Of a DNA stretch of 64,000 nucleotides, positions 6,770 through 42,919 are shown in pieces. Position 1 is the first letter of the stretch. Each line of letters opens with the position of its first letter. Both the position numbers and the translations under genes were made by a program. The notes under the pieces were generated by a model. That model had not been told where the DNA came from. It saw nothing but the letters and a program-made list of their open reading frames with translations, and ran no database searches. The stretch is from Macrostomum lignano (taxonomy: Eukaryota). The stretch lies in assembly GCA_002269645.1 (NCBI GenBank), contig NIVC01001021.1, positions 124,001 to 188,000 on the forward strand, in the 5' to 3' direction.

Positions 6770-8330
6770 ATCATGGCTCAATTCATCTCACTGCCACCCC
6801 CTGAGCAATTCAGCACTAGTGAAGATCAACAGAATGCCGGTAAACGCTATAACAAATGGTCCGATCAAGCATCTTTATCGAAGCATCATGCATCAAAGAC
6901 GAAACTCAGAAGTGCACGCTTCTGGCCCACACGGCCGGCTGAGAAATCGCGCAAGGCATAAAGGACCTGCTAAATGACAAGAAAGGCAGCCTTGAAACTC
7001 TGCTTGCAGCAACTAAAGAGCACTTCAAGGAGCGCAACAGCATCGTATTTTCCCGCTATCAGTTTCGCCTATGTGTTCAGCAACATCGCCCATGTGTTCA
7101 GCAAACAGGAGAGCCCGTGGACTCCTGGTACTCCCGACTCAACTCATGAGAGGCATGAGAGTTCTTAGCACTCAAGAACTCCTTAATCAGAGATCAGTTA
7201 GTGGCGACATGCCGCTCCGATAAACTTTGACGAATATTGCTGCAGGAGTCCAACATTCAGGCTGCAGGAGTCCATGAGCGATGCGTTGAAAGCAGTTGAA
7301 GCAGTTCAGAGACAGCGAAACGCTCCTGAACAGTCAGCGGGTCCCCGGCGGCCCAGCAAACAGCGGCCCAACCAGCTGCTATCGATGCGGCAAGCGCGGA
7401 CACAGCTCATGCAACGCGGCAAAAGGCAACACCTGCCAGGCATGCGGCAAGCTAAACCAGCATGCAGACAACGCAGGCCTCAGACAAGCTCCAACATCAA
7501 CGCCGTAGCGGACAAAGAAGCTGAGGCGGTCTTCACCGATCACGATTGGCTTAAGGCCTTCACTATCCAGTCGCAAAAACCTGCGCCCACACACAACTCC
7601 GCCAACACTCGTCTGAAGATCGAGGGCAAGGACTTCATTGTACTCGGGGATAGTGGAGCCAGCTGCAGCGCCGTGAGCACCGCAGCTAGCAGACATCTAT
7701 TTTCATTTCCCATCACTAAAGGCTGTGGAACGATACGAGACACCGCTTTCAACATGGGAATTCTACACATTCAACATCCAACGGCTAAAGTCGACTCTGT
7801 GCGGCCCACGGAAAATCCAGCTGCATCAAGTATTCAAGCACTGTTCACCAAGTACAGAGGTGTTGACCAAGAACTTCCAACCGAACTCCGCATCAGCAGC
7901 ATCCTTGGTGAGTTCCAGTCCATCTTCGAAGGTCTTGGCTGCGTGAAGGGCGTCGAGGTTGATGTTCGTCTTTGACCAGAAGCTGTCTCGGTCTGCCACA
8001 CACCCTCCAGAGTTCCCGTCCACCAGCGGTCGCGGAACTACAGGCCCTCCTCGACCAAGGCATCATCAACGGCCTGTCACCGTGGGTCTCTCGCATGGTT
8101 GTCGTCCCGAAAGTAAGCAGTGGCGTCCGCATCTGCCAGGACCTGCGTGACGTCAACTCATTAGCCGTGCCAGAAAAGTAGCCCATCCGAACCTTTGAGG
8201 AGATCGCGGACGAGATGGCGGGTTCCACGGTGTTCAGCGAGCTCGACATCGTGAAGGCTTTCCATCAGATTTTTTGTCAAACCGGAACATCTTGGGTCGT
8301 ATGCGACTGAACAGACAGCATGGGATTCAC
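6770..8330 (+). pseudogene. Degenerate gag-pol of the old LTR element (zinc knuckle, protease, partial RT)
   Basis: CYRCGKRGHSSC...CQACGK knuckle, IVLGDSGASCS protease, and SPWVSRMVVVPK...RICQDLRDVN...FSELDIVKAFHQI RT motifs lie across several frames with stops. RT C-half, RNase H and integrase are deleted. Confidence 0.85.
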
Positions 8331-9836: not shown

Positions 9837-10847
9837 ATGGACGCCAACGAAGTAGTAGAAGCTCTGGCTGAAGGAATTAGAGACAGACTAGACATTAGAA
9901 AGCACATTAGGATCCAAAAGTACACGCCTAATCAAGATATAGACGTATGGATTCAGGCTTTTGAGCAAAGGTGTATCGCAGATGAGATACCTGCAGCCGA
10001 TTGGAAAAATGAACTACTATCTAATCTAGATGTCCAATCAGCGTTTGCTATTGTGACAAGGCTGAATTTAGACCCTAATCTACCGTATGCTGAATTCAAG
10101 GATAGGCTCATCGAACGATTCACGCATGCGGGTAGTGCCCAAGAAGCTAGGGAAGAATTCCGCAGCAGATATCAATCTAAGACAGAGAGCTCTGACGACT
10201 ATGCGGAGAAGCTGACAGAGTTAGCCTATATGGCATTTCCCCACCTAACTAATGACCAAAGACAGGAAGAAGTGGTGGAACAATTTATTAGAGGTGTTAG
10301 GATAACCCCAGAGGCTAGGGAGAAGCTACTGCTAGCACAGGCGAACACACTCCAAGAGACACGTCGAGTTTTGCGACGTATCGAAATGGCGTATACCATG
10401 TCTCGCCGAGGTAGAGATCCAGCTCAGTGCAAGGCAACTGGAGGAGATGAGGCGGAAAGTAGCTTGAGGGAGTTAGTCCGCAAGCAAGGTGAGACACTAG
10501 AAAGCCAGCAGAGGGTACTCCAGGAGTTGCTTCGACACCAGCAGAGTGCTGAGCAGAAGGCTAGACAGAAGCCGTACCAAGGCCAGCAACAGGGCCAAGG
10601 TCAGAAGCAGCCAGTAAAGTGCTTCAAGTGTGGGAAAAGCGGTCACATAGCTAAGCATTGCCAGCAGCAGCAGAATCAGCCGCAGTTTCCGCAGCAGCAG
10701 TTTCCACAACCACCACAGTTTATTCCGTACCAGCCGCAGTACCCGCCGCCGCAGTTCCCGCAGCAGCAGTTCCCGCAGCAGTACCAGAATAAGAATCAGG
10801 GAAACGGAGTAGCCGGAAGCGTAGGAGGCAACGCTTTCCAGAAGTAG
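9837..10847 (+). CDS. gag: Gag (336 aa) with CCHC zinc knuckle and Gln/Pro-rich tail
   Basis: Intact ATG ORF; CFKCGKSGHIAKHC. Confidence 0.95.
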   Translation: MDANEVVEALAEGIRDRLDIRKHIRIQKYTPNQDIDVWIQAFEQRCIADEIPAADWKNELLSNLDVQSAFAIVTRLNLDPNLPYAEFKDRLIERFTHAGSAQEAREEFRSRYQSKTESSDDYAEKLTELAYMAFPHLTNDQRQEEVVEQFIRGVRITPEAREKLLLAQANTLQETRRVLRRIEMAYTMSRRGRDPAQCKATGGDEAESSLRELVRKQGETLESQQRVLQELLRHQQSAEQKARQKPYQGQQQGQGQKQPVKCFKCGKSGHIAKHCQQQQNQPQFPQQQFPQPPQFIPYQPQYPPPQFPQQQFPQQYQNKNQGNGVAGSVGGNAFQK

Positions 10848-13800
10848 ACAGCCAGCAGTCTGTAGCCTCGCAACCTGTAAATAGCAGCGATAGTTTTTCT
10901 GTAAATAGTGAATTGAATTCTTTGTATAACAGTAGACATGCGCAACCATTTAATCAATCATTTAATCAACCAAATATTTATTCTCAGCACTTTTCACACG
11001 CACCACAGCAACAACCTTGTTCTAGTAAGCAGCAAATTAAACCACAAAATTTAAGCGAACCAACTAAGAAGCAAAATTACGATCCGTATATTACTGGCAG
11101 CATTCTAAATAAGGAGGTAGTTTATCTATTAGACACTGGCAGCAATAGGAACATTCTAGGACGTGAAACCTGGAAACACTTGTTCACTGGCAAGAATAGT
11201 CACTTAATTAAACAATGGAACAATAGAATCGTATCGTTCACGGAAGAGCCGATTCCAATTAAAGGTTCCGTAGTTATTAAGGCGACATTCGGTGATTTCG
11301 AAGAAGAAATAGAGTTTCTCTTATGTGACGCAGAAGTAGACAATGTAATAGGCGTGACGTTTGTCCAACAATATTGTAATGCTATCGACTTTGAGACAGG
11401 AATGCTAACTATGAAGCAGGGAACCAGAATTCCACTTCGTTCTACCAGAGCTAAGCCTCAGGTTAAGAGAATCTATGTTGCAGAAAAGACGACAGTTCCA
11501 GCTAATAGTTCAGGATTAGTCAAGGTTAGATTAGCCACAGGTAGTGAATCCAATTTCGGAGTGCCGTCAGTTGTTGAGCCACTCAGATCAGGATTGAAGA
11601 CTAGAGCAGAGAAGGTAACTGTAGTACCAAGCTTAGTAACTCTAAGGCAAGGAGAAGCGTATCTAGAAGTGATTAACACCAGCTCACAGGAAGCTAGAGT
11701 GCCAGCAGCAGCACTAGTAGGAATGGCTAAGCCACTTTTAGCTAGTGAATTAAACTATCTTAAAGATCAACCAGAGAAAGAGCAGTTATGCCAGAATAAG
11801 AACACGCAGTTTTGCGAAAACATCAGACAGGTTCAAGACAAGTCAGAAGACTGGATTAGTGAGATTAACATAGGAACTGAACTGACTCAGGAGCAGAGAC
11901 AGAAGGTGATCGAAGTCGTCAAGGAGCATTCAGCAGCTTTCTCGCAGCACGAGTTAGACTTAGGCAGAACGCATTTAGTCACACATGAGATTATCTTGAA
12001 GGACAACAACCCAGTTCAGATACCAGCTAGAAAGATTCCACCTCATTGGATCAAGGAGGTAGATGAGCAGTTAGATCTCATGTTGGCTAGAGGCATCATT
12101 AGGCCTAGTTACTCGCAGTACTCGACTCCATTAGTCATAGTACCTAAGAAAGATGGTTCGCTGAGATTAGTTAACGACTATCGAGCACTAAACAACAAAT
12201 CGGAGTACTTTCCGTATCCAATAACTAATATTAATGAAACATTCTCGTGTCTCCATGGAGCCAGTCAATTTTCTACGTTAGATCTATTCTCAGGATATTA
12301 TCAGATAGCTCTTAGGGAAGAAGATAAATGCAAAACTAGTTTTCCAACTTTACATCGAGGCTCGTTTGAGTACGAAGTTTTGCCAATGGGATTGCAAGGA
12401 GCTCCAGGAACTTTCCAAAGGTGCATGAACTTAGTTCTTAAGGACATTGCACAGAAGTTCGCCATAGCTTACTTAGACGATGTAATAGTTTATAGTACAG
12501 ACTTTGAATCTCACTTAGAACACCTGAAAGAAGTGCTCAAAAGACTAATCCAAGCTAATATGAAACTAAAAGCGAAGAAATGTCACCTTTTCAAATCAGA
12601 ACTGCAATATCTAGGACACATCATAGGCAAATCAGGAATTAAAAGGGATGCGTCAAAGTTAGAAACGATTAGGAACTGGCCAAAACCTAAATCTGTGACA
12701 GAGCTTCGAAGTTTTCTCGGACTCTGTAACTATTATCGAAAGTTTGTTAGAGATTTCGCCGAGGTAGCAGCACCACTCTGTGAGCTAACGAAGAAGAACA
12801 TCAAGTGTATCCAGGACAATTGGACCAGGATTCATGATGAATGCTTCGAGCTGTTGAAGGAACGGATGTGTTCCGAAGAAGTGCTTGCTTACCCAGAGTT
12901 TAATACGGACCCCCAAGTTTATTTTGTGTTAGACACTGATGCATCAGATGTCAGAATTGGGGCGGTCTTAAATCAAGTGCAGAGCGACGGAGTTGAGAGA
13001 CCGATCGCGTATTATAGTCGAAAAATGAGGCAGTCAGAAAGTAGATACCCGATTACGAGGAAGGAGCTTCTAGCGATTGTTGACTCGCTGAAGTACTTCA
13101 GGTTTTACCTCGTAGGGAAACGTTTTAAGGTGCGCACTGATCACAATGCCCTAACCTGGTTGCTTCGCCAGACCGAACAGACAGGCATTTTAGGTCGTTG
13201 GATCGAGAGACTTAGTGAATTTGATTTTGAGATTGAGCATAGAAGTGGCCCTAAGCATGTGAATGCTGATGCTCTATCCAGGATCCCGGATCCTCAACAG
13301 GATGAGTCATCCCCATATGCCAGGTCGCTTAGCTGTAGGGCAACTGTGAACACAGACCCAGCATCAGCTGTTACTGTGAGCTCAGGCAATTCCGCGCAAG
13401 CCGAAACCTGTAGTCTACACAGTGGAGTTACGTCATGCTGTTCGCCGCAGAATATGGCGCCGAACCGACACAATACTCCGAGTTTTAGTAGCAGGTTGCT
13501 AAGCAAAAGGCAAGAACAGGAGCCTAAGGAAAGGTACCCGCTTGTTTGCAATGCACTGCTGAGTGATTATCTTCGTAGCCCTGTGCGTCGCGAAAATTCG
13601 GTCGCAGCTCAGCTAGCCGACCCCGCACTAAGCTATGTCAGGAATCTGATTGAGTCTGACTTGCCGAAACCGAACTTTCAAGAAAGACTAGAATTGTCTC
13701 ACGAGATTAGAAATCTGCTAGGTTATTATGAACTCTTCAGGATAGAAGACGGTGTTCTCCGAATAGACTTAAATTCAGGGCGGACCGAATCTAAAGTGGT

Positions 13801-14620
13801 GTTGCCCAAGTCTTTGGATGGTGAAGTTTTTCACGAATTCCACGATTCACCGTTAGCAGGTCATCTAGGAAGAGATAAAACTTATCAGCGAGTTAAGGAA
13901 AGATTTTGGAGAGTAGGATTAGCTACAGCAGTCGAAAAGTACGTCGCCAAGTGCAAATCTTGTTTAGAAAGTAAATCAAGAAAGCGATGCAAGGCACCAG
14001 TGCAGAATTTTCCTATTGTCGAGCCATTCTCACGCCTTCACATTGATTTGATAGGTCCGATCAGTCAGACTAGCAAATCTGGTAACAAATATGTCTTGTC
14101 AGTTATTGACAGCACTAGCAAATTTCCGTTTGCGTTTGCAATTAAAAATCAGAAGGCTAAGACAGTAATCAAAATTCTGCAGGAGCGAGTTTTCGCCGAC
14201 TTTGGAATACCTCAGTGGATTCACACGGATCAGGGAACACAATTTACAGGGAGAGCATTTAGGAAATTTCTAGACCTCTATGGGATTAGGCACACTAGGA
14301 CAACAAGCTATCATCCACAAAGCAATGGGCTAGTAGAGAATTTAAACAAACAAATTAAGTCAATTCTTACCTGTTTGCTCGAGAAAGAACATGCGAACTG
14401 GGATGTTCTATTGCCCGGTTGTGTAACCGCATTGCGCACCAGTACGCATACAGCCACAGGTTTCAGCCCGCATTATCTTGTGTTTGGAAGAGAGGCCCGG
14501 ATGCCGAGTGACAATGTGTTCCAGCAGCCAAAGGCGTTCGCCGATCTGCCTGCTTACGTTCAAGAGCACTTAACTCACCTGCAAGAGGGGCAAGAACTCG
14601 CCAACAGCGGCTCAAATTAA
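10793..14620 (+). CDS. pol: Pol (protease-RT-RNase H-integrase), -1 frame relative to gag
   Basis: LLDTGS protease, YLDD RT, DTDAS RNase H, H-H-C-C and D,D,E integrase motifs. The frame opens after TAA at 10790-10792 and overlaps the end of gag. Confidence 0.95.
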   Translation, partial: ESGKRSSRKRRRQRFPEVDSQQSVASQPVNSSDSFSVNSELNSLYNSRHAQPFNQSFNQPNIYSQHFSHAPQQQPCSSKQQIKPQNLSEPTKKQNYDPYITGSILNKEVVYLLDTGSNRNILGRETWKHLFTGKNSHLIKQWNNRIVSFTEEPIPIKGSVVIKATFGDFEEEIEFLLCDAEVDNVIGVTFVQQYCNAIDFETGMLTMKQGTRIPLRSTRAKPQVKRIYVAEKTTVPANSSGLVKVRLATGSESNFGVPSVVEPLRSGLKTRAEKVTVVPSLVTLRQGEAYLEVINTSSQEARVPAAALVGMAKPLLASELNYLKDQPEKEQLCQNKNTQFCENIRQVQDKSEDWISEINIGTELTQEQRQKVIEVVKEHSAAFSQHELDLGRTHLVTHEIILKDNNPVQIPARKIPPHWIKEVDEQLDLMLARGIIRPSYSQYSTPLVIVPKKDGSLRLVNDYRALNNKSEYFPYPITNINETFSCLHGASQFSTLDLFSGYYQIALREEDKCKTSFPTLHRGSFEYEVLPMGLQGAPGTFQRCMNLVLKDIAQKFAIAYLDDVIVYSTDFESHLEHLKEVLKRLIQANMKLKAKKCHLFKSELQYLGHIIGKSGIKRDASKLETIRNWPKPKSVTELRSFLGLCNYYRKFVRDFAEVAAPLCELTKKNIKCIQDNWTRIHDECFELLKERMCSEEVLAYPEFNTDPQVYFVLDTDASDVRIGAVLNQVQSDGVERPIAYYSRKMRQSESRYPITRKELLAIVDSLKYFRFYLVGKRFKVRTDHNALTWLLRQTEQTGILGRWIERLSEFDFEIEHRSGPKHVNADALSRIPDPQQDESSPYARSLSCRATVNTDPASAVTVSSGNSAQAETCSLHSGVTSCCSPQNMAPNRHNTPSFSSRLLSKRQEQEPKERYPLVCNALLSDYLRSPVRRENSVAAQLADPALSYVRNLIESDLPKPNFQERLELSHEIRNLLGYYELFRIEDGVLRIDLNSGRTESKVVLPKSLDGEVFHEFHDSPLAGHLGRDKTYQRVKERFWRVGLATAVEKYVAKCKSCLESKSRKRCKAPVQNFPIVEPFSRLHIDLIGPISQTSKSGNKYVLSVIDSTSKFPFAFAIKNQKAKTVIKILQERVFADFGIPQWIHTDQGTQFTGRAFRKFLDLYGIRHTRTTSYHPQSNGLVENLNKQIKSILTCLLEKEHANWDVLLPGCVTALRTSTHTATGFSPHYLVFGREARMPSDNVFQQPKAFADLPAYVQEHLTHLQEGQELANSGSN

Positions 14621-19040: not shown

Positions 19041-19700
19041 CAGGTTGCACCTTTCTCCAGCCGCGTGCTAGCATGAAGAGTCTGCAAAGTCTGCACAGAT
19101 CTGCAGAAAGGAAATTTCTATGCTTATTACCCAGGCGCCACGTAGCTCAATCTGCACCTGGCTTCAAAGTGCTTGTCTTTCGCAGCAGATGGGACCATTC
19201 TTTTGCGCCCAGCATCAGACGTTTGTAACATTTTTCCCTCAGCAATTTTCAGTCGCCTACCCTGGATAAATCAGCTTTGACCGCACGTTTGTTTATAATT
19301 CCTGCTGAGAAAAGACAGCTGCTTGCAGAACCTTACCTATGCGTTCCACGCCTGATTAATAACCCTTAGTGGTACCTTTGAATTCGTTGTAGGTAAGGTA
19401 TAGTTTAGTAATCCATTATATTCCCTGTATCTATACAGCTGACTAGATTCATAACTTGTTTAAATTTTTTTTATTATTAAATTTGTTTAATTATTCATAA
19501 TTAAGATCCATAATTATATTCCTTCATCGATGACGTTGACTAGATTAGCAATCCAATTACATTCTCTGTATCAATACTCTTGGCTAGATTAGCAATCCAT
19601 TACTCTATTCATTTTCGATTCATTCAGTATTCAATTTCGCAACAACAGCAGTGGCAGCAGCAACAGCAGCAACAGCAGCAACAGCAGCAACAGCAGCAAC

Positions 19701-19769
19701 GGTGGGCAATGGGACCGCTTTCTCGTAGCGCCCCCGAGCACATGGATCCCCCATGTGGCGAAGTGTCCC
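19701..19769 (+). ncRNA. HDV-like self-cleaving ribozyme motif at the element 5' end
   Basis: P1 GGUGGGC/GCCC-CC, P2 GGGAC-C/GUGUCCC, P3 GCU/AGC, L3 UUCUCGU, P1.1 UC/GA, P4 CACAUGG/CCAUGUG, J4/2 GCGAA. P1 and P2 each lack one A. Confidence 0.8.
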
Positions 19770-19789
19770 TCCTTCCCCGGACAGCACGT

Positions 19790-22700
19790 ACGAAGAGCAA
19801 CGATTACGACAACGGCCCACCCGATCAGCGGGAAAGCGGGAACCTCGACCACGTCCTCCGCCTACGGGGCGGCAGCGACCCCCCGTCTAAAGGAAGCAGA
19901 CACGGCAACCGTCGCAACAGGCGCCATGCTAAAGCACTGGAAGAGCTCCTTATCCTACAGTTCAACTGTAACGGCATTAGAGCCAGGACTCCGGAACTAA
20001 CCAGGTGGCTGGATACGCATCGCCCTGCGGCAGTCCTTCTGCAAGAGACAAAACTAACGCCGGACACGAGCTACACCGCCCCGAGCGGCTATAGTGTAGC
20101 AGCCCGTGCCGACGGCAGCAACAAAATTGACATTTTCCCAGGCTCAGACGCCACCGAGAGCGCAACAGAAACTGCCACCGCCACCCGGCCATTCCAGCCC
20201 GGCGCCACGTGCACCGCCCGCACCTTCCCGCGAAGGCCACGGTGCCGTCTTCGCTGGCCTGATGACAGAACTGACTGGTGTAAAGGCTGCAGATCATCCC
20301 GATCGGCTTGCACCCGGCGCAATGAGCCATGGCCAGACGCGAAGGCCCAAATCGGCGCGGACAACCACAATAAAACCCAAAAAAATAACAACGCGCAATC
20401 CGGACCTGACCGCCACACGGCCACGACGCAACCAAACGATACAACCGGAGCGACGTCGGGACCCCTCGGCAAAAACACCACTGAAAAGCGGAAAAACAAA
20501 AACTTGCAACCCGGTCTCGACACCGCCTCCACATGGCTGTGCGCAGCCTGCAACAATATCATTACCAAACGCCAGACTAGCCTCCGCTGCAACCAGTGCT
20601 GGAACTGGCTACACCTGAAATGTAGCGGCCTCAAGCGCAGTAAAGACTGGAACGACGAATACATCGGAAGCTGCTGCTCGACACCACAAGATGCGAGCCG
20701 ATCCAGCACACCGTCAACATTGCCCAAGTCTACACCTAAAGATCCAGTAACGGTCAGACCAGCCAACCCGTCGACCCCACCGCAACGCCGCTCCAAGAGA
20801 GCCGGTCGGGAGGCGCCCTCATCATGGTCAGAAACGATATCAACTTCACCACCCTGCCCGACCAATCCAAAGCCGCACTTGATATTGCTGCGTGCACTCT
20901 CCACCTCAAAGGTCAAGGCGACCTCAACATCGCCAGTGTGTACGCTGCCCCTCACAGTGACCAACGCCAACATGAAGCCTGGACTCCGGATCTCTCTTGT
21001 ATACCGATAACGGGCAACACCGTCATAGGCGGAGATTTCAATTGTCACGGTTACTGGGACCCTTTCCAGCCCGGAGATACCAGGGGCGCCGAACTGGAAA
21101 CCTGGGCGAGTAATAACAACCTCAACATCGGCAACACCAGGAACTCTGCGACAAGACTCAACCCAGCGACGGGAGGCAAATCGGCACCGGACTGCACCTT
21201 GGCCCGAGGCCGTCCGAGCGCAGTTGTTTGCAGAACCTGGTCCACCGCTAAAGATCTTGGCTCCGATCATCTGCCTATCACCTTCTGCGTGCAAGCGCGT
21301 CGCCCTCATCGACAACAACGACAAGCGCAGTGGTCGTACAAGAAGGCGAATTGGCAGATATTTAAAGAGACCCTTCAAAATCATGTCCAGGACGCGGCGG
21401 AATCCCCCGAAGCAGAACACAAACGTATCTGCAAAGCCATACTGCAAGCCGCCGCAGCAGCTATCCCGAAGGGAGCCCGGAACGGCGCGCAGAACATTTC
21501 GAGACCTTTCTGGAATGACGAATGCGATACAGCGCTACACAGAAATCAGAAAGCCCGCAAAAATGTCGAAACAGATGCATTCGACACAAACATGCAGGAA
21601 CTCACACAAGCGCGCACGTGCCTTCGCAATACCATTCACAACGCCAAAAAAGAATTCTGGTCGGAAACGTGTAAAGAAATGAAGATAGACACCAATCTCT
21701 ACAGGACCCTCCGCAACATGAGAGGCGAAGCCAAACCACAAGCAACCAGCTCCACCATTAGCTATACCAACCCAACTTCTGGTAGGACTAAAGTGGCTAT
21801 CACTAAAAAGAATAAGGCCGACCTCTTCATGCAAATCTACGCTAAAGAATCCCGGCTAGATAAGGGAGACAACGACGAGGCTATAGTGAAAGAGGCTAAC
21901 CGCATCCTCCGCAACTGCAGAGCTACCGCCACCAACCACGGCCCGGAATCAGACTTTACTATCGGCGAATTCCGTCACATTATCCGCAGACTAAAATCCG
22001 GTAAATGCCCTGGCCCTGACCAGGTCAGCAATGAGATGTTGAAACAGCTCCCCCTGGCCATGGAGCTTCAGATCCTCAACCTTCTGAACAGAGTCTGGAA
22101 GGGTGACCAAGTCCCCACCGAATGGCGAAGAGCCACTATCATACCGATTCTTAAGAAGGACAAATCGCCAAGCTCACCGTCCTCGTACCGACCTATTGCC
22201 CTTACGAGCTCCATCTGCAAGGTCGGAGAGAAACTCGTACAGCAAAGACTTAACGCTTACCTCGAACGTGAACACAAACTGGCCCCAGAGCAGGCGGGCT
22301 TTCGCCAGGGCAGGAGCACCGAAGAGGTCCTCGCCCACACCTGCCAATCGATTTTTATGGTTTTGAGGAACAACCAGCGAAACGCTCTGCCATATGCCTA
22401 CTCGACTTCAGCAAGGCCTATGACAGAGTATGGCGCGCTGCTCTGACTGTTAAGCTATACGAGCTCACGGTACCTGCTAGATTCATCCTCTGGGTGCACA
22501 AATTCCTCAGAGACCGCCGCGCCAGGGTGAAATGGCAACAAACTATCAGCAGGGAAAGAGTCCTCGAAGAGGGCCTTCCACAAGGAAGCGTCATCGCCCC
22601 CACCCTGTGGACTACGTACGTCAACGACCTGCCGACGACCATAAAAAGGGCTAGCCCTGATTGTAAAATTAACCTATACGCCGACGACAGCTCACTGTTA

Positions 22701-24411
22701 GCCACCAGCAGGAAGCTAACGGACTGCGCCGACATCCTGCAACCAGCCATTGATGCGGCCGCCGAATGGTGTAAGCGGTGGAAGGTCACCCTCAGCACCG
22801 AGAAATGCATCTACTCGACCTTCACTCTCTCGCCACAAGAGAACAACGGCAAAGTCCGACTCAACCTGCACATTAACGGAGCCGAACTTAAATACGATCC
22901 GCACCCCGACTCCTAGGCCTGACCCTTGACGATCAGCTAACCTTCAACAAGCATGGAGCCGAGGTAAAGGCCCGCATGGCCCGGCGCAGAGGCGCACTCA
23001 CGGCCATTGCCCACCGCAACAGTGGAGCGGACCAAAACATCCTCCGCTCGGCCTATATCACCACTATCAGAGCGTGTGCAGACTACGGAAGCGGTATATG
23101 GCTAACCGGAGCAGCGCCTAGCACGCGACGCATGATCGAACAACAGCAGTCGATATGCGCGCGGATGATCACAGGCTGCTGCAGTACTACCCGCAACGAG
23201 ACCACGCTCAACATCGCCAGGCTCCCCCGATCGGCTCGATCGCCATAGAACGCGCGGCCATGCTTCGCGAGCGCATTCTTCGTCTCCCGCCGGACTGCCC
23301 GGCAGTGGATACCGCCGCCCGCTCGACGAGACCCCGCCTAAAAAACCGAAGCTATGACCCGCAAGACGAACCGGGAAGCGGAATAGGAGCCCGAGACCGA
23401 GAACGGCCACACCGCGGATGCTGGAGGAGGGCCGCACGAGAACTCCCTGTTGTAGCGACGCTCGATGAAATGGCGCGCGAGCAGATCATCATCGCCGCCC
23501 CCTGGGAAAGCGACACCAGCGCGGAAGTTATCTTCGACACAACGGCGAGTATGGTCAACCGCAAAGCCCCGGCAGAAGAACGCGCCAGAGCGGCCGACGC
23601 GGTCCTCAGAGCGGCCCAAGAGCTCGAGATCACGGCCTGGACGGACGGCTCCGCCAACGAAGGCTGCACCCACGGAGGGGGAGCGGCCGTGATCCACTAC
23701 AATGGTACCACTACTGAGCACCTAGCACCGGCCGGGACATACTGCAGCAGCTACCAAGCAGAAATGACTGCTATCGCAACCGCCCTTCGTGCCTCGTTGG
23801 AGCTACACGCCGCCGCCAACAGTATAGCCATCCTCACAGACAGCCTCAGCGCCCTGTCGGCACTGGCCCGCGGCCCGGCCGGCCAGCGTAATGCTGCCGG
23901 GCATGCCTGCAGGGACACCATCGCGAGAGCCACCTACTCCAAGGTCTACTTCGGATGGGTACCTGGCCACTGCCAGATTGCCGGCAACGAAGCGGCCGAC
24001 AGAGCGGCGGCTATGGCAGCTACCCTTCCGCAGAGCGAAGCTGCCATCACGTTAGACTCCGCGAGGGCTGCTATCCGCCGCGATCGCCGACGCCGCGACG
24101 CAGAGCCTACCAACCAGCCGTCACCCACCGACACCACCCGCAATCGACGCGAGCAGGTGTTGGTTAATCAACTCAGAGCGGGCGTCTCCACCATCTGCGC
24201 CGCCACCCGCCAACGTCTTGGTCTCCAAGAGGACGACAAGTGTAGTGACTGCGGCGCGGTGGACACGGCCGACCACCTCCTCCGCCGCTGCCCAAGAGGT
24301 GACGCCGCCAGAGCCCGCTACTTCGGCGTCGAGGACCCCCTATCGGCGCCGACAGGCCGGATCATCGCGTTCGTACGTGCTGTGGGGCGCCTGAGCCCCC
24401 GCCAATATTGA
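19790..24411 (+). pseudogene. Retrotransposon polyprotein (~1540 aa when reconstructed), broken by 4 apparent single-base deletions (~20806, ~22356, ~22908, ~23226)
   Basis: ORF track pieces 19580-21010, 20824-22446, 22494-22916, 22976-23248 and 23155-24411 join into one colinear protein if one base is added at each junction. Confidence 0.85.
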
Positions 24412-24484
24412 CGCCGAAGCGTCAACGGCGTGCCGGGAAACAGAAGAAGAAGAAGAAGAACAGCAGCAACAGCAGCAACAGCAG

Positions 24485-25200
24485 CCTCACATCCAGCAGG
24501 CCTCCGAGCAGCTCCAGACACTGGCTAGACCCCATCGGGGCTGGCCGCCAGTGCTGGACTGTCAGGCGTGGGGTGGAAGGTCCGTTGGCCACGGACACGA
24601 AAGCTGGAATTCCGGCCCCTCTGCTGGGGTTGACCCTGGTGGACCTGGTGGCAGGCTCACCGACATGCCCTCTGCACACTCACGCGGCGACGCGGTGGTG
24701 CAAGGCCCCTGTCCTATGGTGAGCGGGGCATTGACGGCTGGCTGTGCCATGTTGCAGTCAGACCGTTCCCGTAGGCCCATTGACCAGGTGACCCAGCGGG
24801 GCCGGCATCAACAACAACAGCAGCAACAGCAGCAACAGCCTCACATCCAGCAGGCCTCCGAGCAGCTCCAGACACTGGCTAGACCCCATCGGGGCTGGCC
24901 GCCAGTGCTGGACTGTCAGGCGTGGGGTGGAAGGTCCGTTGGCCACGGACACGAAAGCTGGAATTCCGGCCCCTCTGCTGGGGTTGACCCTGGTGGACCT
25001 GGTGGCAGGCTCACCGACATGCCCTCTGCACACTCACGCGGCGACGCGGTGGTGCAAGGCCCCTGTCCTATGGTGAGCGGGGCATTGACGGCTGGCTGTG
25101 CCATGTTGCAGTCAGACCGTTCCCGTAGGCCCATTGACCAGGTGACCCAGCGGGGCCGGCATCAACAACAACAACAACAGCAGCAACAGCAGCAACAGCA
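24485..25200 (+). mobile_element. Two identical tandem 354-bp-period units (unique parts 24485-24808 and 24839-25162), each ending in a (CAA)n tail
   Basis: Direct duplicate. Each ends ...GGGGCCGGCAT-CAACAACAAC and is bounded by CAG/CAA tracts. Probably the 3' end or a non-autonomous derivative of a second non-LTR family. Confidence 0.7.
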
Positions 25201-26304
25201 GGAGCTGCCTGAAGCTGGCAATACCTTAAAAATGAGGCAAATTTTCGAGGGGTCAAGTAATCAAGGGAATCCTTCTTCGTAGCCAAGGAATGGGATCTAA
25301 GGTCTTCTATAGACCTTCGATATTATCTGGACTGTGATTATTGTCTATGAACTTGTTCTAATTTGTTTTAAGTGTGATATAGGGCCAAAACTCTCAAAAG
25401 ATGGTGTCTGGAATGAAATTATTTTCAAAGCAATGCCAAAGACTTTTAGCAATAAAATCTGAAGGGAAGTCAAAGACTTCTAAAGGTAAAATCTGGACTA
25501 AATAGACTATGGTCTATATGTAAAAAATGGCCAAAGACTTATAGGGGTCAGTCTCTGTACTGGAATTATCTTTAGGCTGTGCCAAAGACTTCTAGAGGTA
25601 ACATCTGGACGAGAGTTATTTAAGTCAATGCCAAAAAGTTCTAGAAGACAATATCTGACATTAAAATATTTTTTAGGATTGATAGAGCTGCGGAATGACT
25701 ACTTTATAGCTTTTTACGGTGTTCTCTTGCATCATTGTAAAATGTCATTACACAATAGCTATCAATTTTGTAAGTTACTCTCGTATTACATGTAAATCTC
25801 ATAATTATTTTTTTCGTGTCTTTTTTCTATACTATGAGTAGCACGTCGCAGAAACACTTTTTTACCAATAAATACAACAGAAAATCAAGCTTTTTGCGCC
25901 ATTGAAATTTTTAACAGCTTTGAATTGAACTGCTGATATATTGCTTTGGAATATTCTTTTACACGAAAGGAACACTGCCTGCTCATTGCCAATTTCTATC
26001 TATGCTTTCAACTGTGTTTAATTTGAATCTGGAGCTCGAATCCTTTCGCTTGTTTTATTTTTTATGTTTTATGCTTCATGTTTTACAATGGCGGTGCCTT
26101 GAAGATGTTAGTGTTATCATACCTTATTTTATTTTTGTTATCATTATTGCCTAAATACGTATTTAGTATATTTAGTTAATTGGGACTGTCGGTCGTCTTT
26201 TCAGTAGTATTTTATCATTTCAGTTTATGCTTCAAATTAACCCTTAGTATTATGTTGGTACAATAAACGGATGATTTCGGCACTGTTGTACTGCCCTGTA
26301 TGTT

Positions 26305-28155
26305 ACATATGGTACAGATTGTGTTGGTAAGTGTCTATGGTACAGATTGTGTTGGTAAGTGTCTATGGTACAGATTGTGTTGGTAAGTGTCTATGGTACA
26401 GATTGTGTTTGCAAGTGTCTATGGTACAGATTGTGTTTGCAAGTGTCTATGGTACAGATTGTGTTTGCAAGTGTCTATGGTACAGATTGTGTTGGTAAGT
26501 GTCTATGGTACAGATTGTGTTTGCAAGTGTCTATGGTACAGATTGTGTTTGCAAGTGTCTATGGTACAGATTGTGTTTGCAAGTGTCTATGGTACAGATT
26601 GTGTTTGCAAGTGTTAATGGTACAGATGTGTTTGCAAGTGTCTATGGTACAGATTGTGTTTGCAAGTGTCTATGGTACAGATTGTGTTTGCAAGTGTCTA
26701 TGGTACAGATTGTGTTTGCAAGTGTCTATGGTACAGATTGTGTTTGCAAGTGTCTATGGTACAGATTGTGTTGGTAAGTGTCTATGGTACAGATTGTGTT
26801 TGCAAGTGTCTATGGTACAGATTGTGTTTGCAAGTGTCTATGGTACAGATTGTGTTTGCAAGTGTCTATGGTACAGATTGTGTTTGCAAGTGTTAATGGT
26901 ACAGATGTGTTTGCAAGTGTCTATGGTACAGATTGTGTTTGCAAGTGTCTATGGTACAGATTGTGTTTGCAAGTGTCTATGGTACAGATTGTGTTTGCAA
27001 GTGTCTATGGTACAGATTGTGTTTGCAAGTGTTAATGGTACAGATGTGTTTGCAAGTGTCTATGGTACAGATTGTGTTTGCAAGTGTCTATGGTACAGAT
27101 TGTGTTTGCAAGTGTTAATGGTACAGATGTGTTTGCAAGTGTCTATGGTACAGATGTGTTTGCAAGTGTCTATGGTACAGATGTGTTTGCAAGTGTCTAT
27201 GATACAGATTGTGTTTGCAAGTGTCTATGGTACAGATTGTGTTTGCAAGTGTCTATGGTACAGATTGTGTTTGCAAGTGTCTATGGTACAGATTGTGTTT
27301 GCAAGTGTCTATGGTACAGATGTGTTTGCAAGTGTCTTATGGTACAGATTGTGTTTGCAAGTGTCTATGGTACAGATTGTGTTTGCAATTGTCTATGGTA
27401 CAGATTGTGTTTGCAAGTGTCTATGGTACAGATTGTGTTTGCAAGTGTCTATGGTACAGATTGTGTTTGCAAGTGTCTATGGTACAGATTGTGTTTGCAA
27501 GTGTCTATGGTACAGATGTGTTTGCAAGTGTCTTATGGTACAGGTCGTGTTCGCAAGTGTCTATGGTACAGATTGTGTTGGCAAGTGCCTATGGTACAGA
27601 TGTGTTTGCAAGTATCTATGGTACAGATGTGTTTGCAAGTGTCTATGATACAGATTGTGTTTGTAAGTGTCTATGGTATAGATTGTGTTGGCAAGTGTCT
27701 ATGGTACAGATTGTGTTTGCAAGTGCCTATAGTACAGATGTGTTTGCAAGTGTCTATGATACAGATGTGTTTGCAAGTGTCTATGGTACAGATTGTGTTG
27801 GCAAGTGCCTATGGTACAGATGTGTTTGCAAGTGCCTATGGTACAGATTGTGTTTGCAAGTGTCTATGGTACAGATTGTGTTTGCAAGTGTCTATGGTAC
27901 AGATTGTGTTTGCAAGTGTCTATGGTACAGATTGTGTTTGCAAGTGTCTATGGTACAGATTGTGTTTGCAAGTGTCTATGGTACAGATTGTGTTGGTAAG
28001 TGTCTATGGTACAGATTGTGTTTGCAAGTGTCTATGGTACAGATTGTGTTGGCAAGAGTCTATGGTACAGATTGTGTTTGAAAGTGTCTATGGTACAGAT
28101 TGTGTTCGCAAGTGTCTATGGTACAGATTGTGTTCGCAAGTGTCTATGGTACAAA
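26305..28155. repeat. 28-bp minisatellite (GTGTCTATGGTACAGATTGTGTTTGCAA), ~66 copies
   Basis: Read directly from the sequence. Explains ORFs 26359-28184. Confidence 0.97.
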
Positions 28156-28624
28156 TCATGAGTCTACTCAAATATTGGCGTTAGGTCGTTTTCATGCATG
28201 CATGTATAGCGAACACTACTCGTATGTGGGCTACAGAATTGAGAAAGCAGCAAAGCTTCTACAAGCGTAGAGGCCACCATGGTCCTCCATAATTAGGGCA
28301 GGTTGTCCGTCCAAAAGAGAAGATAACAAAAAATCAGGTGTCGGATAATAATTGTTACATGTAGAACAGAATTTCAAAAAAATTATCAAAGCGAAGAAAA
28401 TTGTCTCTTGCAAGGCCTAGATGAAAGCTGCGTCTATCGAGCACAATACATCTGTTTTCGAGAATACTTTTCTATGCGTTGCGTTTTCATTTAATGTGCC
28501 TCACTGACACCTGGTGCCGGCTTCTAACGTTGGACCTCGTAGCTTTTTAGACAGCTGTTCGTAGCCAGGTGCGTTCGTAGCCAGACGTTTGGGAGGAAGC
28601 AGCGACCTCCCAGGATATCGGCTT

Positions 28625-37030: not shown

Positions 37031-37299
37031 GAACAAAGACCTCCAACGTATAGCAGTCTAGTTTGTTGAACAAAGAGTTCCGATGATAAAGTTAAATTTG
37101 TTTATACTAGTTCCTATTTTGTAATGTGTGGTGTGCCTACCGTTACTGCAGACAATTAGTAACTGTGCCACCTGGTAAATTTCGCCACTTTTGCTTTTTC
37201 CTGTCCAGTAGTTTGCAGCAGCTGTTGTAGATCCAATTAAACTACACTTGACGCTACAGAATAATCGCTTACATTGGTTTACCTCTGTAATGACTCACC

Positions 37300-42380: not shown

Positions 42381-42919
42381 TTTACCCCTTAGTCTATTAG
42401 AAAGTCTATCATTTCTAATTGTCTTCCCCACTCTCGTCTCACCTCCAGTCATTCACCACGTCCCCCCTGTTCAAAGCGCATGATCGCTGCTGCAATATGG
42501 GCTGGAGTGCCTGCTGATGAGCAGTTTATAACCCCTTAGAAGGTCCGAAACCGAATGTTATGCTTGCACTTCTTGGCTTGGAATGCATTCCAGTCTAGCC
42601 AAAGGGGAAAAATGAAATTGACAGTCAGAAAAACATGTTTTCACGAAATCCATTTGCAGCAGCTCTTCAGAAACCGATTGCAAAGCGTAAAAAAGTTTCG
42701 ATGCGTCTCCTAAGGTTAGCAGAGTGATATTCTGAGCTGGAGACGCCTTTCTGACATTGCTCGCAATTCTCGCCCCGAGCCATATTTTATAAGGGCTATT
42801 TTATCGATTTATCACAAATATTTCAGCAACTGCAGCAAAAATCCTATGAAAACTGTGAGTCTGTCCTGTGTCTACCTGTCTACCCTTCTGTCTGCCTAAA
42901 CCTTTGGGCTGGTTACTAG

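What the first reader, a model, noticed from the sequence alone, without database searches (positions are those of the whole stretch)
19701..19769. HDV-like ribozyme starting exactly at the first base of the retrotransposon
Every element of the nested double pseudoknot is present in order: P1 19701-19707/19730-19735, P2 19711-19716/19763-19769, P3 GCU/AGC, L3 UUCUCGU, P1.1 with a U-A/C-G variant of the HDV C-G/C-G pairs, a perfect 7-bp P4, and J4/2 GCGAA with the catalytic C at 19759. The predicted cut is 5' of G19701, exactly at the microsatellite junction. P1 and P2 become perfect 7-bp helices if one A is restored in each (GCCC[A]CC, GGGAC[A]C). Known: HDV-like ribozymes process the 5' ends of R2, RTE and Ingi/L1Tc elements. 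Inference: it releases the element from host read-through transcripts. This instance and family may be undescribed.
Basis: partly seen in the sequence, partly recalled or inferred. Interest (0 to 1): 0.85.

Follow-up and report, generated by a model that had tools for sequence, protein, structure and literature searches.

The report
HDV-like ribozyme heading a dead LINE
The first ~70 bases of a decayed LINE-type retrotransposon encode a hepatitis-delta-virus-like self-cleaving RNA fold, conserved with compensating base changes in eight distant relatives. It is a real but ordinary new example of a known way these elements trim their own 5' end.

Summary
Window 19701-19770 (+) contains every element of the HDV-like nested double pseudoknot at the stated coordinates.

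A covariance model built only from eight relatives, with the window left out, finds this site as the only significant match in 64 kb (39.7 bits, E~8e-7; next best 11.3 bits).

Across nine sequences, 90.8% of pair cells are standard pairs. Nineteen of 25 pairs change on both sides, against ~50% pairing in slid controls. P1 was not part of the model, and it also covaries.

The ribozyme heads an endonuclease (APE) + reverse transcriptase (RT) + RNase H LINE with at least 4 frameshifts, so this copy is dead. (CAACAGCAG)n flanks it on both sides.

The unpaired U19764 in P2 and the 6-nt 3' strand of P1 are family features, not deletions; antigenomic HDV has a comparable extruded base at the bottom of P2. 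The predicted cut is 5' of G19701 or G19702.

Relatives carry a 2A peptide just downstream, giving the same layout as trypanosome L1Tc. Cleavage itself is untested.

Verdict: a new member of a known kind, of moderate interest.

The parts
19639..19700 (+). 5' flanking microsatellite (CAACAGCAG)n, ending ...CAAC
   Evidence: TRF, period 9, 6.9 copies. The same repeat follows the element at 24450-24485.
19701..19701 (+). G that is either the -1 base (family register) or the +1 base (reader, Rfam and MFE register) of the ribozyme
   Evidence: Alignment column 1 varies (G/C/U) and is unpaired in 7 of 9 sequences; column 2 is G in 9 of 9. The Rfam alignment and the MFE fold pair it with C19735 and bulge U19703.
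19702..19707 (+). P1 5' strand (GUGGGC). It pairs with 19730-19735, with a U19703 x C19734 mismatch in the family register.
   Evidence: P1 was not in the covariance model. Across 9 sequences 94% of its cells are paired and 4 of 6 pairs change on both sides. Per-sequence table.
19708..19710 (+). J1/2 (AAU). With G19711 it contains an AUG (19709-19711) in frame with the endonuclease ORF.
   Evidence: J1/2 is 2-3 nt in all nine sequences.
19711..19716 (+). P2 5' strand (GGGACC)
   Evidence: Pairs with G19763 and 19765-19769. P2 is 95% paired and 6 of 7 pairs change on both sides.
19717..19719 (+). P3 5' strand (GCU)
   Evidence: 100% paired; 2 of 3 pairs change on both sides.
19720..19726 (+). 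L3 (UUCUCGU), with U19720 and G19725 equivalent to HDV/CPEB3 U20 and G25. U19721 and C19722 form P1.1.
   Evidence: The L3 consensus is UUCNCGY. U, C and G at L3 positions 1, 3 and 6 are invariant in all 9 sequences. Three relatives have UUCACGU; I recall this as the CPEB3 L3, and PMC4836649 names U20, C22, A23 and G25, which agrees with it.
19727..19729 (+). P3 3' strand (AGC)
19730..19735 (+). P1 3' strand (GCCCCC)
19736..19737 (+). P1.1 3' bases (GA): G19736-C19722 and A19737-U19721
   Evidence: The G-C pair is present in all 9 sequences once L005/L007 are read in their own register. The second pair is A-U in the window, C-G in L009, G.U in L002 and U x U in the rest, as in CPEB3 (PMC4836649).
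19738..19758 (+). P4 hairpin: a G19738/G19758 homopurine position, a 7-bp stem 19739-19745 with 19751-19757, and loop AUCCC
   Evidence: Every relative has its own 5-8 bp P4 of different sequence. The homopurine pair before the catalytic C is described in PMC2175327.
19759..19762 (+). J4/2 (CGAA). C19759 is the predicted catalytic cytosine (HDV C75/C76, CPEB3 C57).
   Evidence: The C is invariant in 9 of 9. The sequence is C(G/A)AA in 8 of 9 and CCAC in L011.
19763..19769 (+). P2 3' strand G[U]GUCCC, with U19764 unpaired
   Evidence: The unpaired U is at this position in 9 of 9 sequences. The analogous base G81 is extruded in antigenomic HDV (PMC2175327).
19844..19885 (+). Degenerate remnant of a 2A (StopGo) peptide, LDHVLRLRGGSDPP, in the ORF frame
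   Evidence: It aligns with ..HLALVRLRAGDIExNPGP of the relatives. The NPGP motif is absent from the window copy.
19943..20107 (+). Endonuclease (APE) domain, N-terminal part
   Evidence: Pfam Exo_endo_phos; tblastn with relatives.
20108..20808 (+). Cys-rich insert that splits the endonuclease domain. It has an RWPDDRTDWCKGCR motif and a PHD/C1-like finger, and contains at least one frameshift.
   Evidence: The same kind of insert is present in relatives P0020, P0065 and P0066.
20809..23191 (+). Endonuclease C-terminal part, linker and reverse transcriptase, spread over three reading frames (shifts near 22355 and 22907)
   Evidence: Pfam Exo_endo_phos_2 and RVT_1; tblastn frame map.
23359..24411 (+). 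RNase H domain (about 23629-24021) and the C-terminal region; stop codon TGA at 24409-24411
   Evidence: Pfam RNase_H, E 3e-12; tblastn.
24410..24485 (+). 3' end: a hairpin GACGC-CGAA-GCGUC over the stop codon (24410-24423), then (AAG)5, then (CAGCAGCAA)3
   Evidence: L002, L004 and L005 also have a stop-codon hairpin, a very short 3' UTR and a simple-repeat tail.

Best explanation
Window 19701/2-19769 is the 5'-terminal HDV-like self-cleaving ribozyme of a non-LTR retrotransposon. The element runs from 19701/2 to about 24485 and encodes an endonuclease (APE) split by a Cys-rich insert, a reverse transcriptase and an RNase H.

SHOWN: the sequence has the full nested double-pseudoknot architecture and the conserved core bases.
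- Core bases: the catalytic C in J4/2, CGAA, the L3 U...G, the C of P1.1, and G at +1.
- The same architecture sits at the 5' end of eight distantly related elements, whose proteins are about 30-45% identical to the window's.
- All helices in those relatives carry compensatory changes.
- In two relatives, sequence repeated on both sides of the element (putative target-site duplications) places the element's 5' end within a few bases of the first base of P1.

INFERRED from R2, L1Tc and RTE/Baggins:
- The element is transcribed as part of a longer transcript.
- The first ~70 nt fold as they are made.
- C19759, with Mg2+, catalyses attack of the 2'-OH of the upstream base on the phosphate 5' of G19702 (or G19701).
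- The upstream RNA, here the CAG/CAA repeat, is released with a 2',3'-cyclic phosphate. The element RNA starts with a 5'-OH exactly at its own first base.
- Because the cut lies upstream of the catalytic domain, the ribozyme travels with every new copy.

The reading frame is open through the ribozyme. In relatives a 2A peptide follows 60-85 codons downstream, the same order as in trypanosome L1Tc. The folded ribozyme may therefore also help cap-independent translation, with 2A discarding the ribozyme-encoded leader.

This particular copy is a fossil. It has at least 4 frameshifts, a degenerate 2A and one mismatch in P1, so it may or may not still cleave.
For: - **Architecture and core bases** at the stated coordinates.
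- **Independent model.** R2, built without the window, scores the site at 39.7 bits, E~8e-7, the only significant match in 64 kb.
- **Pair counts on nine sequences.** 90.8% of cells are standard pairs; 19 of 25 pairs change on both sides; 0 of 500 shuffles reach this; slid controls give 47-57%.
- **P1 and P1.1** were not in the model and so were not fitted. P1 is still 94% paired, with 4 of 6 pairs covarying.
- **Rfam** HDV_ribozyme aligns over its full length, 24 bits, E 0.04, in the 81-nt search.
- **Position in relatives.** The ribozymes lie directly upstream of the 2A + endonuclease ORF in L002, L004-L007 and L009-L011.
- **5' boundary.** L005 and L007 share sequence only from GGACGUC onward. 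Flank sequence is repeated at both ends of L005 (GGCGAAAAAA) and L002 (ATCGGGGGTG).
[quoted passage not shown] CPEB3 has a G-C plus U-U P1.1 (PMC4836649). Antigenomic HDV has an extruded base at the bottom of P2 and a homopurine pair before the catalytic C (PMC2175327). L1Tc is ordered ribozyme, 2A, AP endonuclease, RT, RNase H (PMC5814959). Dong, a (TAA)n-specific element, has an active 5' HDV-like ribozyme (PMC3774820).
Against: - No cleavage has been measured for this sequence or for any relative.
- The Rfam score is below the gathering threshold (24 against 50 bits). No Rfam HDV-type family matched the three relatives tested, L004, L009 and L010.
- Nested MFE folding is no better than shuffles (z = -0.5). 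That method cannot represent the pseudoknots.
- The window copy has a mismatch or bulge in P1 and a U x U at the outer end of P2, and the element is dead.
- There are only nine sequences from about six lineages.
- P2, P3 and P4 were aligned by a model that contains them, which biases those counts. P1 is unaffected.
- L011 has a variant J4/2 (CCAC) and a variant L3.
- The relatives come from unidentified organisms in metagenome assemblies.
Confidence: 0.85

Rival explanations
1. The conserved 5' fold is real, but its job is not self-cleavage. It could be an internal promoter or downstream promoter element, a binding site for the element's own protein, or an IRES-like start signal that only resembles HDV.
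For: - L1Tc's first 77 nt act as both promoter and ribozyme, and the R2 ribozyme region also binds R2 protein and is proposed to act as an IRES (PMC5814959, PMC6765202).
- Three relatives have CACGUG in L3/P3', reminiscent of the CGTG promoter core at +25 to +28 of L1Tc (PMC5814959).
- The ORF is open through the structure.
Against: - The bases that are invariant are the ones needed for catalysis rather than for a generic fold. These are the J4/2 C followed by (G/A)AA, the L3 U and G, the P1.1 G-C, and G at the start of P1.
- The CGTG motif is absent from the window.
- These roles are additions to cleavage in the known cases, not alternatives to it.
Confidence: 0.08
2. The family ribozyme is genuine, but this window copy no longer cleaves. 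On this view it is a molecular fossil with no present activity.
For: - The element has at least 4 frameshifts and a degenerate 2A.
- P1 has U19703 opposite C19734, where relatives have a pair.
- U19710 x U19770 lose the seventh P2 pair.
- No second copy lies in the window.
Against: - All core bases are intact.
- An alternative P1 register with U19703 bulged gives six G-C pairs and is the MFE choice.
- Relatives L009 and L010 also carry one P1 mismatch.
- Natural HDV-like ribozymes tolerate such defects to varying degrees (PMC4035085).
Confidence: 0.4
3. The conservation reflects protein coding (a leader peptide) or chance, not RNA structure.
For: - The region is translated-through in all copies, and an AUG lies in J1/2 in seven of nine.
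- A loose structural descriptor finds chance matches elsewhere in the window.
Against: - Changes are concentrated as paired double substitutions in helices (19 of 25 pairs).
- The reading frame relative to the ribozyme differs between copies: the AUG frame is not the 2A frame in L002, L004 and L006, and L005/L007 have no AUG.
- The encoded peptides are unrelated: MGPLSRSAPEH in the window against MEAPFTWGRR in relatives.
- The family model gives E~8e-7.
Confidence: 0.02

Closest known systems
L1Tc/ingi Pr77 ribozyme (L1TcRz) of trypanosomatid LINEs
   Same: - An HDV-like ribozyme occupies the first ~70-77 nt of an AP-endonuclease + RT + RNase H LINE.
- The cut is at the element's +1 base.
- In the relatives found here, a 2A peptide follows at the start of the ORF (PMC5814959, PMC4035085).
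   Different: - L1TcRz starts with C1 and differs in P1 and P1.1 composition (PMC4035085).
- L1Tc has a poly(A) tail and no reported Cys-rich insert in the endonuclease.
- The host here is probably an animal.
- Sequence homology to Pr77 and placement of the RT in a clade were not tested.
- The window copy has lost the NPGP motif.
CPEB3 ribozyme (mammalian HDV-like)
   Same: - A compact ~68-70 nt fold.
- A 7-nt L3, UUCACGU (my recollection of the CPEB3 sequence), which is identical in L002, L004 and L006.
- A P1.1 of one G-C plus a U-U in six relatives.
- J4/2 CGAA (PMC4836649).
   Different: - CPEB3 is intronic and not part of a retrotransposon.
- The window has L3 UUCUCGU and a two-pair P1.1 (G-C, A-U).
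- Most of this family has a 6-bp P1, and all nine sequences have the unpaired U in P2.
Antigenomic HDV ribozyme
   Same: - Nested double pseudoknot.
- A homopurine G/G position before the catalytic C.
- A four-base J4/2.
- The bottom P2 pair is followed by an extruded base: G81 there, U19764 here (PMC2175327).
   Different: - It is viral and acts in rolling-circle RNA replication.
- It has an 8-nt L3 and a 7-bp P1.
- The Rfam HDV model scores the window only 24 bits against a threshold of 50.
R2 / R4 / Dong 5' ribozymes
   Same: - The 5'-terminal HDV-like ribozyme cuts at or near the junction with the target.
- Dong sits in (TAA)n, and its ribozyme releases the upstream microsatellite RNA (PMC3774820).
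   Different: - Those elements use a restriction-like endonuclease and lack RNase H.
- Their ribozymes are often much larger, with long J1/2.
- Site specificity of the present element is not established, because only one copy was seen.

Membership tests
HDV-like self-cleaving ribozymes (structural family) | Nested double pseudoknot: P1, P2, P3, P1.1 and P4 in the canonical order, with P1/P1.1/P4 and P2/P3 forming two stacks | tested here: met
   All helices are present in the window and in 8 relatives. 90.8% of cells are paired and 19 of 25 pairs change on both sides. The definition is taken from PMC4908430.
HDV-like self-cleaving ribozymes (structural family) | Catalytic cytosine in J4/2, followed by purine-rich bases that dock on P3 | tested here: met
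   C19759 followed by GAA. The C is invariant in 9 of 9, and the sequence is C(G/A)AA in 8 of 9.
HDV-like self-cleaving ribozymes (structural family) | L3 with the U20...G25 pair partners and the C that forms P1.1 (1-2 bp) | tested here: met
   L3 is UUCNCGY. U, C and G at positions 1, 3 and 6 are invariant. The P1.1 G-C is present in 9 of 9, and the second pair covaries: A-U, C-G, G.U (PMC4836649).
HDV-like self-cleaving ribozymes (structural family) | Self-scission 5' of the first base of P1, Mg2+-dependent, giving a 5'-OH and a 2',3'-cyclic phosphate | not testable with these tools
   This needs in vitro transcription and cleavage assays plus end mapping. The predicted site is 19700/19701 or 19701/19702.
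Rfam RF00094 HDV_ribozyme (HDV proper) | Score at or above the curated gathering threshold (50 bits) | tested here: not met
   24.0 bits, E 0.04, in the 81-nt search. There was no match in the gathering or 301-nt scans. The sequence is therefore HDV-like, not a member of the viral family model.
Retrotransposon 5'-end processing ribozymes (R2, L1Tc, RTE/Baggins type) | The ribozyme begins at the first base of a non-LTR element, upstream of its ORF | tested here: met
   - The microsatellite ends at 19700.
- The ORF runs from the ribozyme into the endonuclease.
- L005 and L007 share sequence only from P1 onward.
- Flank repeats bracket L002 and L005.
L1Tc/ingi clade | RT phylogeny within the ingi clade, and sequence homology to the Pr77 hallmark | not tested
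   No reference sequences were on hand. Only the domain order (ribozyme, 2A, endonuclease, RT, RNase H) matches (PMC5814959).
Microsatellite-specific non-LTR elements (Dong, Waldo, etc.) | Many independent copies inserted in the same microsatellite | tested here: inconclusive
   Only one copy lies in the window, flanked on both sides by (CAACAGCAG)n. Relatives sit in unrelated sites.

The most novel reading that the evidence does not exclude
The window element and its metagenomic relatives may form an undescribed, widely distributed lineage of endonuclease + RT + RNase H LINEs. They were found in a probable animal genome and in marine and sand metagenomes.

Their endonuclease is split by a Cys-rich or PHD-like insert. 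They share with trypanosome L1Tc a 5' module of HDV-like ribozyme, translated-through leader and 2A peptide.

That would make the ribozyme + 2A pairing an ancient, general answer to expressing a promoter-less, uncapped LINE RNA, rather than a trypanosome peculiarity. This copy would additionally target a (CAACAGCAG)n microsatellite.
Probability: 0.35. Interest if true: 0.55.

Novelty: new member of a known kind. Interest (0 to 1): 0.4.

Why it matters

Its value is a clean, comparatively supported new ribozyme family of nine sequences with rich covariation. The family has a conserved unpaired base in P2 and mostly a 6-bp P1.

It also shows that the ribozyme-then-2A arrangement known from L1Tc recurs far outside trypanosomes.

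The models built here (R1, R2) could be used to annotate these elements and their exact 5' ends in invertebrate and protist genomes.

Tried and rejected
- **Rfam scans.** At gathering thresholds over the whole window, and at E<=10 over 301 nt, Rfam gave no HDV-type match. Only an 81-nt search surfaced RF00094, below threshold. The three relatives tested, L004, L009 and L010, gave none.
- **My own descriptor.** A permissive HDV descriptor found the site but also about 4 chance sites in the window. The strict version found nothing, because of the P1/P2 irregularities. I abandoned it as a test.
- **Nested MFE fold.** z = -0.5, which is uninformative for a pseudoknot.
- **Sibling copies in the window.** None was found by blastn or tblastn.
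- **The window protein** is not on record in the assembly index.
- **Metagenome-contig scan.** It gave one weak locus (L008) with no ribozyme.
- **L012.** It looked like the closest relative at the endonuclease N-terminus. Its contig starts only 97 nt upstream of the gene, so the 5' end is missing.
- **Ubiquitin tail idea.** I considered that VLRLRGG (19853-19873) is a ubiquitin C-terminal tail. I rejected this because it aligns with the LRLRAGD part of the relatives' 2A peptides.
- **Alternative P1.1 register.** I considered pairing columns 38/39 with L3 positions 4/3, together with a seventh P1 pair at columns 1-37. It fits the window, L004 and L006, but fails in L002, L005, L007, L009, L010 and L011 (and my reading).
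- **Papers not held.** Ruminski et al. 2011 and Webb et al. 2009 are not in the library. Their descriptor and list of element families could not be checked.
- **RT clade** could not be assigned, for lack of named reference sequences.

Full report
**1. The observation**

- P3 is GCU/AGC around a 7-nt L3.
- P4 is a perfect 7 bp.
- J4/2 is CGAA, with C19759.
- P1.1 is C19722-G19736 and U19721-A19737.
- P2 is GGGACC with G-GUCCC, and U19764 is unpaired.
- P1 is GCCCCC against GGUGGGC with one irregularity.

The (CAACAGCAG)n microsatellite ends at 19700.

**2. Is it more than chance?**

Structure-only tests were weak.
- A permissive descriptor of my own found the site but also about four other places in the window.
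- Nested MFE folding gave z = -0.5.
- Rfam found nothing at gathering thresholds or in a 301-nt scan.
- Searching only 81 nt, Rfam's HDV_ribozyme aligned over its full length at 24 bits, E 0.04. Its threshold is 50 bits.

The decisive evidence came from relatives.

**3. The element**

Downstream lies one decayed non-LTR retrotransposon. Its parts, in order:
- endonuclease (APE) N-terminus, 19943-20107;
- a ~700-bp Cys-rich insert with a PHD/C1-like finger;
- endonuclease C-terminus, then reverse transcriptase;
- RNase H, about 23629-24021;
- stop codon at 24409-24411.

The coding sequence is spread over at least four frame changes, so the copy is dead. No second copy is in the window.

Other content of the window points to an animal host:
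- a Ty3/gypsy element;
- a mariner transposase;
- an ankyrin gene;
- a DEG/ENaC channel exon.

**4. Relatives**

The best protein relatives are only about 34% identical and come from ENA and JGI metagenome assemblies. One of them, P0020, has the same split endonuclease.

Fetching its contig, and those of further relatives, gave eight more sequences with the same RNA architecture. Each lies directly upstream of the ORF:
- L002 1739-1822
- L004 5636-5698
- L006 4374-4436
- L005 5566-5639
- L007 4683-4756
- L009 1800-1866 (a TARA metagenome scaffold)
- L010 37-105
- L011 3195-3273

A table of all nine sequences, helix by helix, is.

**5. Tests**

I built a covariance model from the eight relatives only. 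It contains P2, P3 and P4, because P1 is pseudoknotted and cannot be included. With filters off, it finds 19701-19770 at 39.7 bits, E~8e-7. The next best match in 64 kb is 11.3 bits.

I then counted pairs on the nine-sequence alignment with the full pseudoknotted structure.
- 90.8% of cells are standard pairs.
- 19 of 25 pairs change on both sides.
- 0 of 500 shuffles reach this.
- Partner-slid controls give 47-57%.

P2, P3 and P4 were aligned by a model that contains them, so those counts lean towards the structure. P1 was not modelled, yet it is 94% paired, with 4 of 6 pairs changing on both sides. Examples are GUGGGC/GCCCCC, GCCUUC/GAAGGC, GCCAUC/GAUGGC and GGACGUC/GACGUCC.

The invariant bases are the catalytic ones:
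- the J4/2 C followed by (G/A)AA;
- the U, C and G of L3 (UUCNCGY);
- the G-C of P1.1;
- G at the start of P1.

**6.

*(a) The 'missing A' in P2.* All nine sequences have G[U]G.. at the start of the P2 3' strand. The inner C-G pair becomes A-U in L005/L007, so it is a real pair that covaries, and the unpaired U beside it is conserved in all nine. In antigenomic HDV the base after the bottom P2 pair (G81) is likewise extruded (PMC2175327).

*(b) The 'missing A' in P1.* Seven of the nine have a 6-nt P1 3' strand, and L005/L007 have a clean 7-bp P1. In the family register the window has G19702-C19735, U19703 x C19734, then four pairs. The alternative register is G19701-C19735 and G19702-C19734 with U19703 bulged. 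That is what MFE folding and the Rfam alignment choose.

Column 2 is G in all nine sequences, and it forms G.U in L009 and L010. From memory, this matches the G1.U37 pair of HDV. Column 1 varies. Cleavage maps to the first base of P1 (PMC4908430). The cut is therefore predicted 5' of G19702 or of G19701.

*(c) G19738 and G19758.* They occupy the position of the homopurine pair before the catalytic C (PMC2175327).

*(d) P1.1.* It is G-C plus A-U in the window, C-G in L009, G.U in L002 and U x U in six relatives. The last form is the CPEB3 arrangement (PMC4836649). Three relatives have L3 UUCACGU, which I recall as the CPEB3 L3.

**7. Is it really the element's first base?**

- L005 and L007 share sequence only from GGACGUC onward.
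- L005 is bracketed by GGCGAAAAAA and L002 by ATCGGGGGTG, at the ribozyme start and again after the tail. I read these by eye as target-site duplications. In L002 the microhomology leaves the start ambiguous by up to three bases.
- In the window the same microsatellite lies on both sides of the element (19639-19700 and 24450-24485).
- By analogy with L002, whose tail is (AAG)5 followed by the repeated flank, the window element's own tail may be (AAG)5. The CAG/CAA repeat would then be the split target.

**8. Wider anatomy**

In all eight relatives the reading frame is open through the ribozyme. The 2A motif (D[V/I]ExNPGP) is seen in the translations of L002 and L004-L007 and in the products P0069, P0071 and P0076 of L009-L011. 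In L002 and L004-L007 it lies 60-85 codons downstream of the ribozyme start.

The window has only a degenerate remnant, LDHVLRLRGGSDPP, which aligns with ..LALVRLRAGDIExNPGP.

The order ribozyme, 2A, AP endonuclease, RT, RNase H is the order described for trypanosome L1Tc (PMC5814959).

At the 3' end, the window, L002, L004 and L005 all have a hairpin over the stop codon, a very short 3' UTR and a simple-repeat tail.

**9. Mechanism**

The architecture, its conservation and its position are shown. The following steps are inferred from R2, L1Tc, RTE/Baggins and Dong (PMC6765202, PMC3774820, PMC5814959):
- co-transcriptional folding;
- C19759- and Mg2+-dependent cleavage, releasing the upstream repeat RNA;
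- an element RNA with a precise 5'-OH end;
- possible help with cap-independent translation, with 2A removing the leader.

**10. Verdict**

This is a genuine HDV-like ribozyme of a previously unannotated LINE family, in a dead copy. It is a new member of a known kind. I put confidence at 0.85 that it is what it looks like, and at roughly even odds that this particular copy still cleaves.

Noticed in passing
window 24486-25201: Two tandem 354-bp GC-rich units, 97% identical, follow the LINE directly. Each ends in the same (CAA)n(CAGCAGCAA)n repeat. They show no similarity to the LINE body, and neither family model nor my descriptor found a ribozyme in them. They could be SINE-like passengers inserted into the same microsatellite, or a host minisatellite.
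   Followed up: partly
window 20108-20808; relatives P0020, P0065, P0066, P0075, P0079: The AP-endonuclease domain is split by a 200-290 aa insert rich in P, T and A. The insert carries one or more Cys motifs (R..DDR..WC.GCR...C). In the window it also carries a PHD/C1-like finger (CAACNNIITKRQTSLRCNQCWNWLHLKCSG). In P0076 a PHD finger sits between the 2A peptide and the endonuclease instead. I do not know of this architecture in a described LINE clade.
   Followed up: partly
L002 ~1915-1965, L004, L005, L006, L007 (60-85 codons after the ribozyme start); window 19844-19885: Relatives have a canonical 2A/StopGo motif (..LLxxAGD[V/I]ExNPGP) between the ribozyme and the endonuclease. The window has a degenerate version lacking NPGP. 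Its VLRLRGG looks like the ubiquitin C-terminus, but it aligns with the 2A upstream consensus.
   Followed up: yes
window 19709-19711; J1/2 of L002, L004, L006, L009, L010, L011: An AUG lies in J1/2 (..C AUG G..) in seven of nine ribozymes. In the window it is in frame with the endonuclease. In L002, L004 and L006 it is out of frame with the 2A/endonuclease frame, which is open from the first base but has no AUG. L005 and L007 have no AUG in J1/2. How translation starts is unexplained.
   Followed up: partly
L004 5636-5642 vs L006 4374-4380: These two close relatives look about 95% identical by eye in the ~100 nt downstream of the ribozyme. They differ at 4 of the 7 bases of the P1 5' strand (CGUCGAC vs GGCUGGC) but at only 3 of the remaining 56 ribozyme bases. 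All in-helix changes are transitions that keep pairing through G.U. The reason for the faster change at the extreme 5' end is unexplained.
   Followed up: no
window 24410-24423; L002 ~6913-6935; L004 ~12177-12192; L005 ~10692-10710: A short GC-rich hairpin spans the stop codon in each element: GACGC-CGAA-GCGUC in the window. A very short 3' UTR and a simple-repeat tail follow: (AAG)5, (AAC)n or (AG)n. The hairpin is possibly the 3' recognition signal for the reverse transcriptase.
   Followed up: partly
L002, L004, L006 ribozymes, L3/P3' (UUCACGUGGG): These contain CACGUG, with CGUG at about +24 to +27. This is close to the position (+25 to +28) of the CGTG downstream-promoter core reported inside L1Tc Pr77 (PMC5814959). 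The window has CGUA here.
   Followed up: no
window 9837-14620 (+), 61872-63020 (+), 33237-34385 (-), 50080-51012 (-): - A Ty3/gypsy-type element (gag, zinc knuckle, RT, RNase H, integrase), on the same strand and about 5 kb upstream of the LINE.
- A mariner/Mos1-type transposase.
- An ankyrin-repeat ORF.
- A DEG/ENaC (amiloride-sensitive channel) exon.

Together these suggest an animal, probably an invertebrate, genome rich in repeats.
   Followed up: partly
window 26359-28184 and 37248-42483: These are long stretches of strongly strand-skewed composition (GC skew +0.4 and -0.55). The first shows a repeating translation (SMVQIVFASVYGTDCVCKCLWYRLCLQV) and is clearly a tandem array. The very long multi-frame ORFs listed in both are most likely artefacts of repeats, not genes. 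TRF was not run on either.
   Followed up: no
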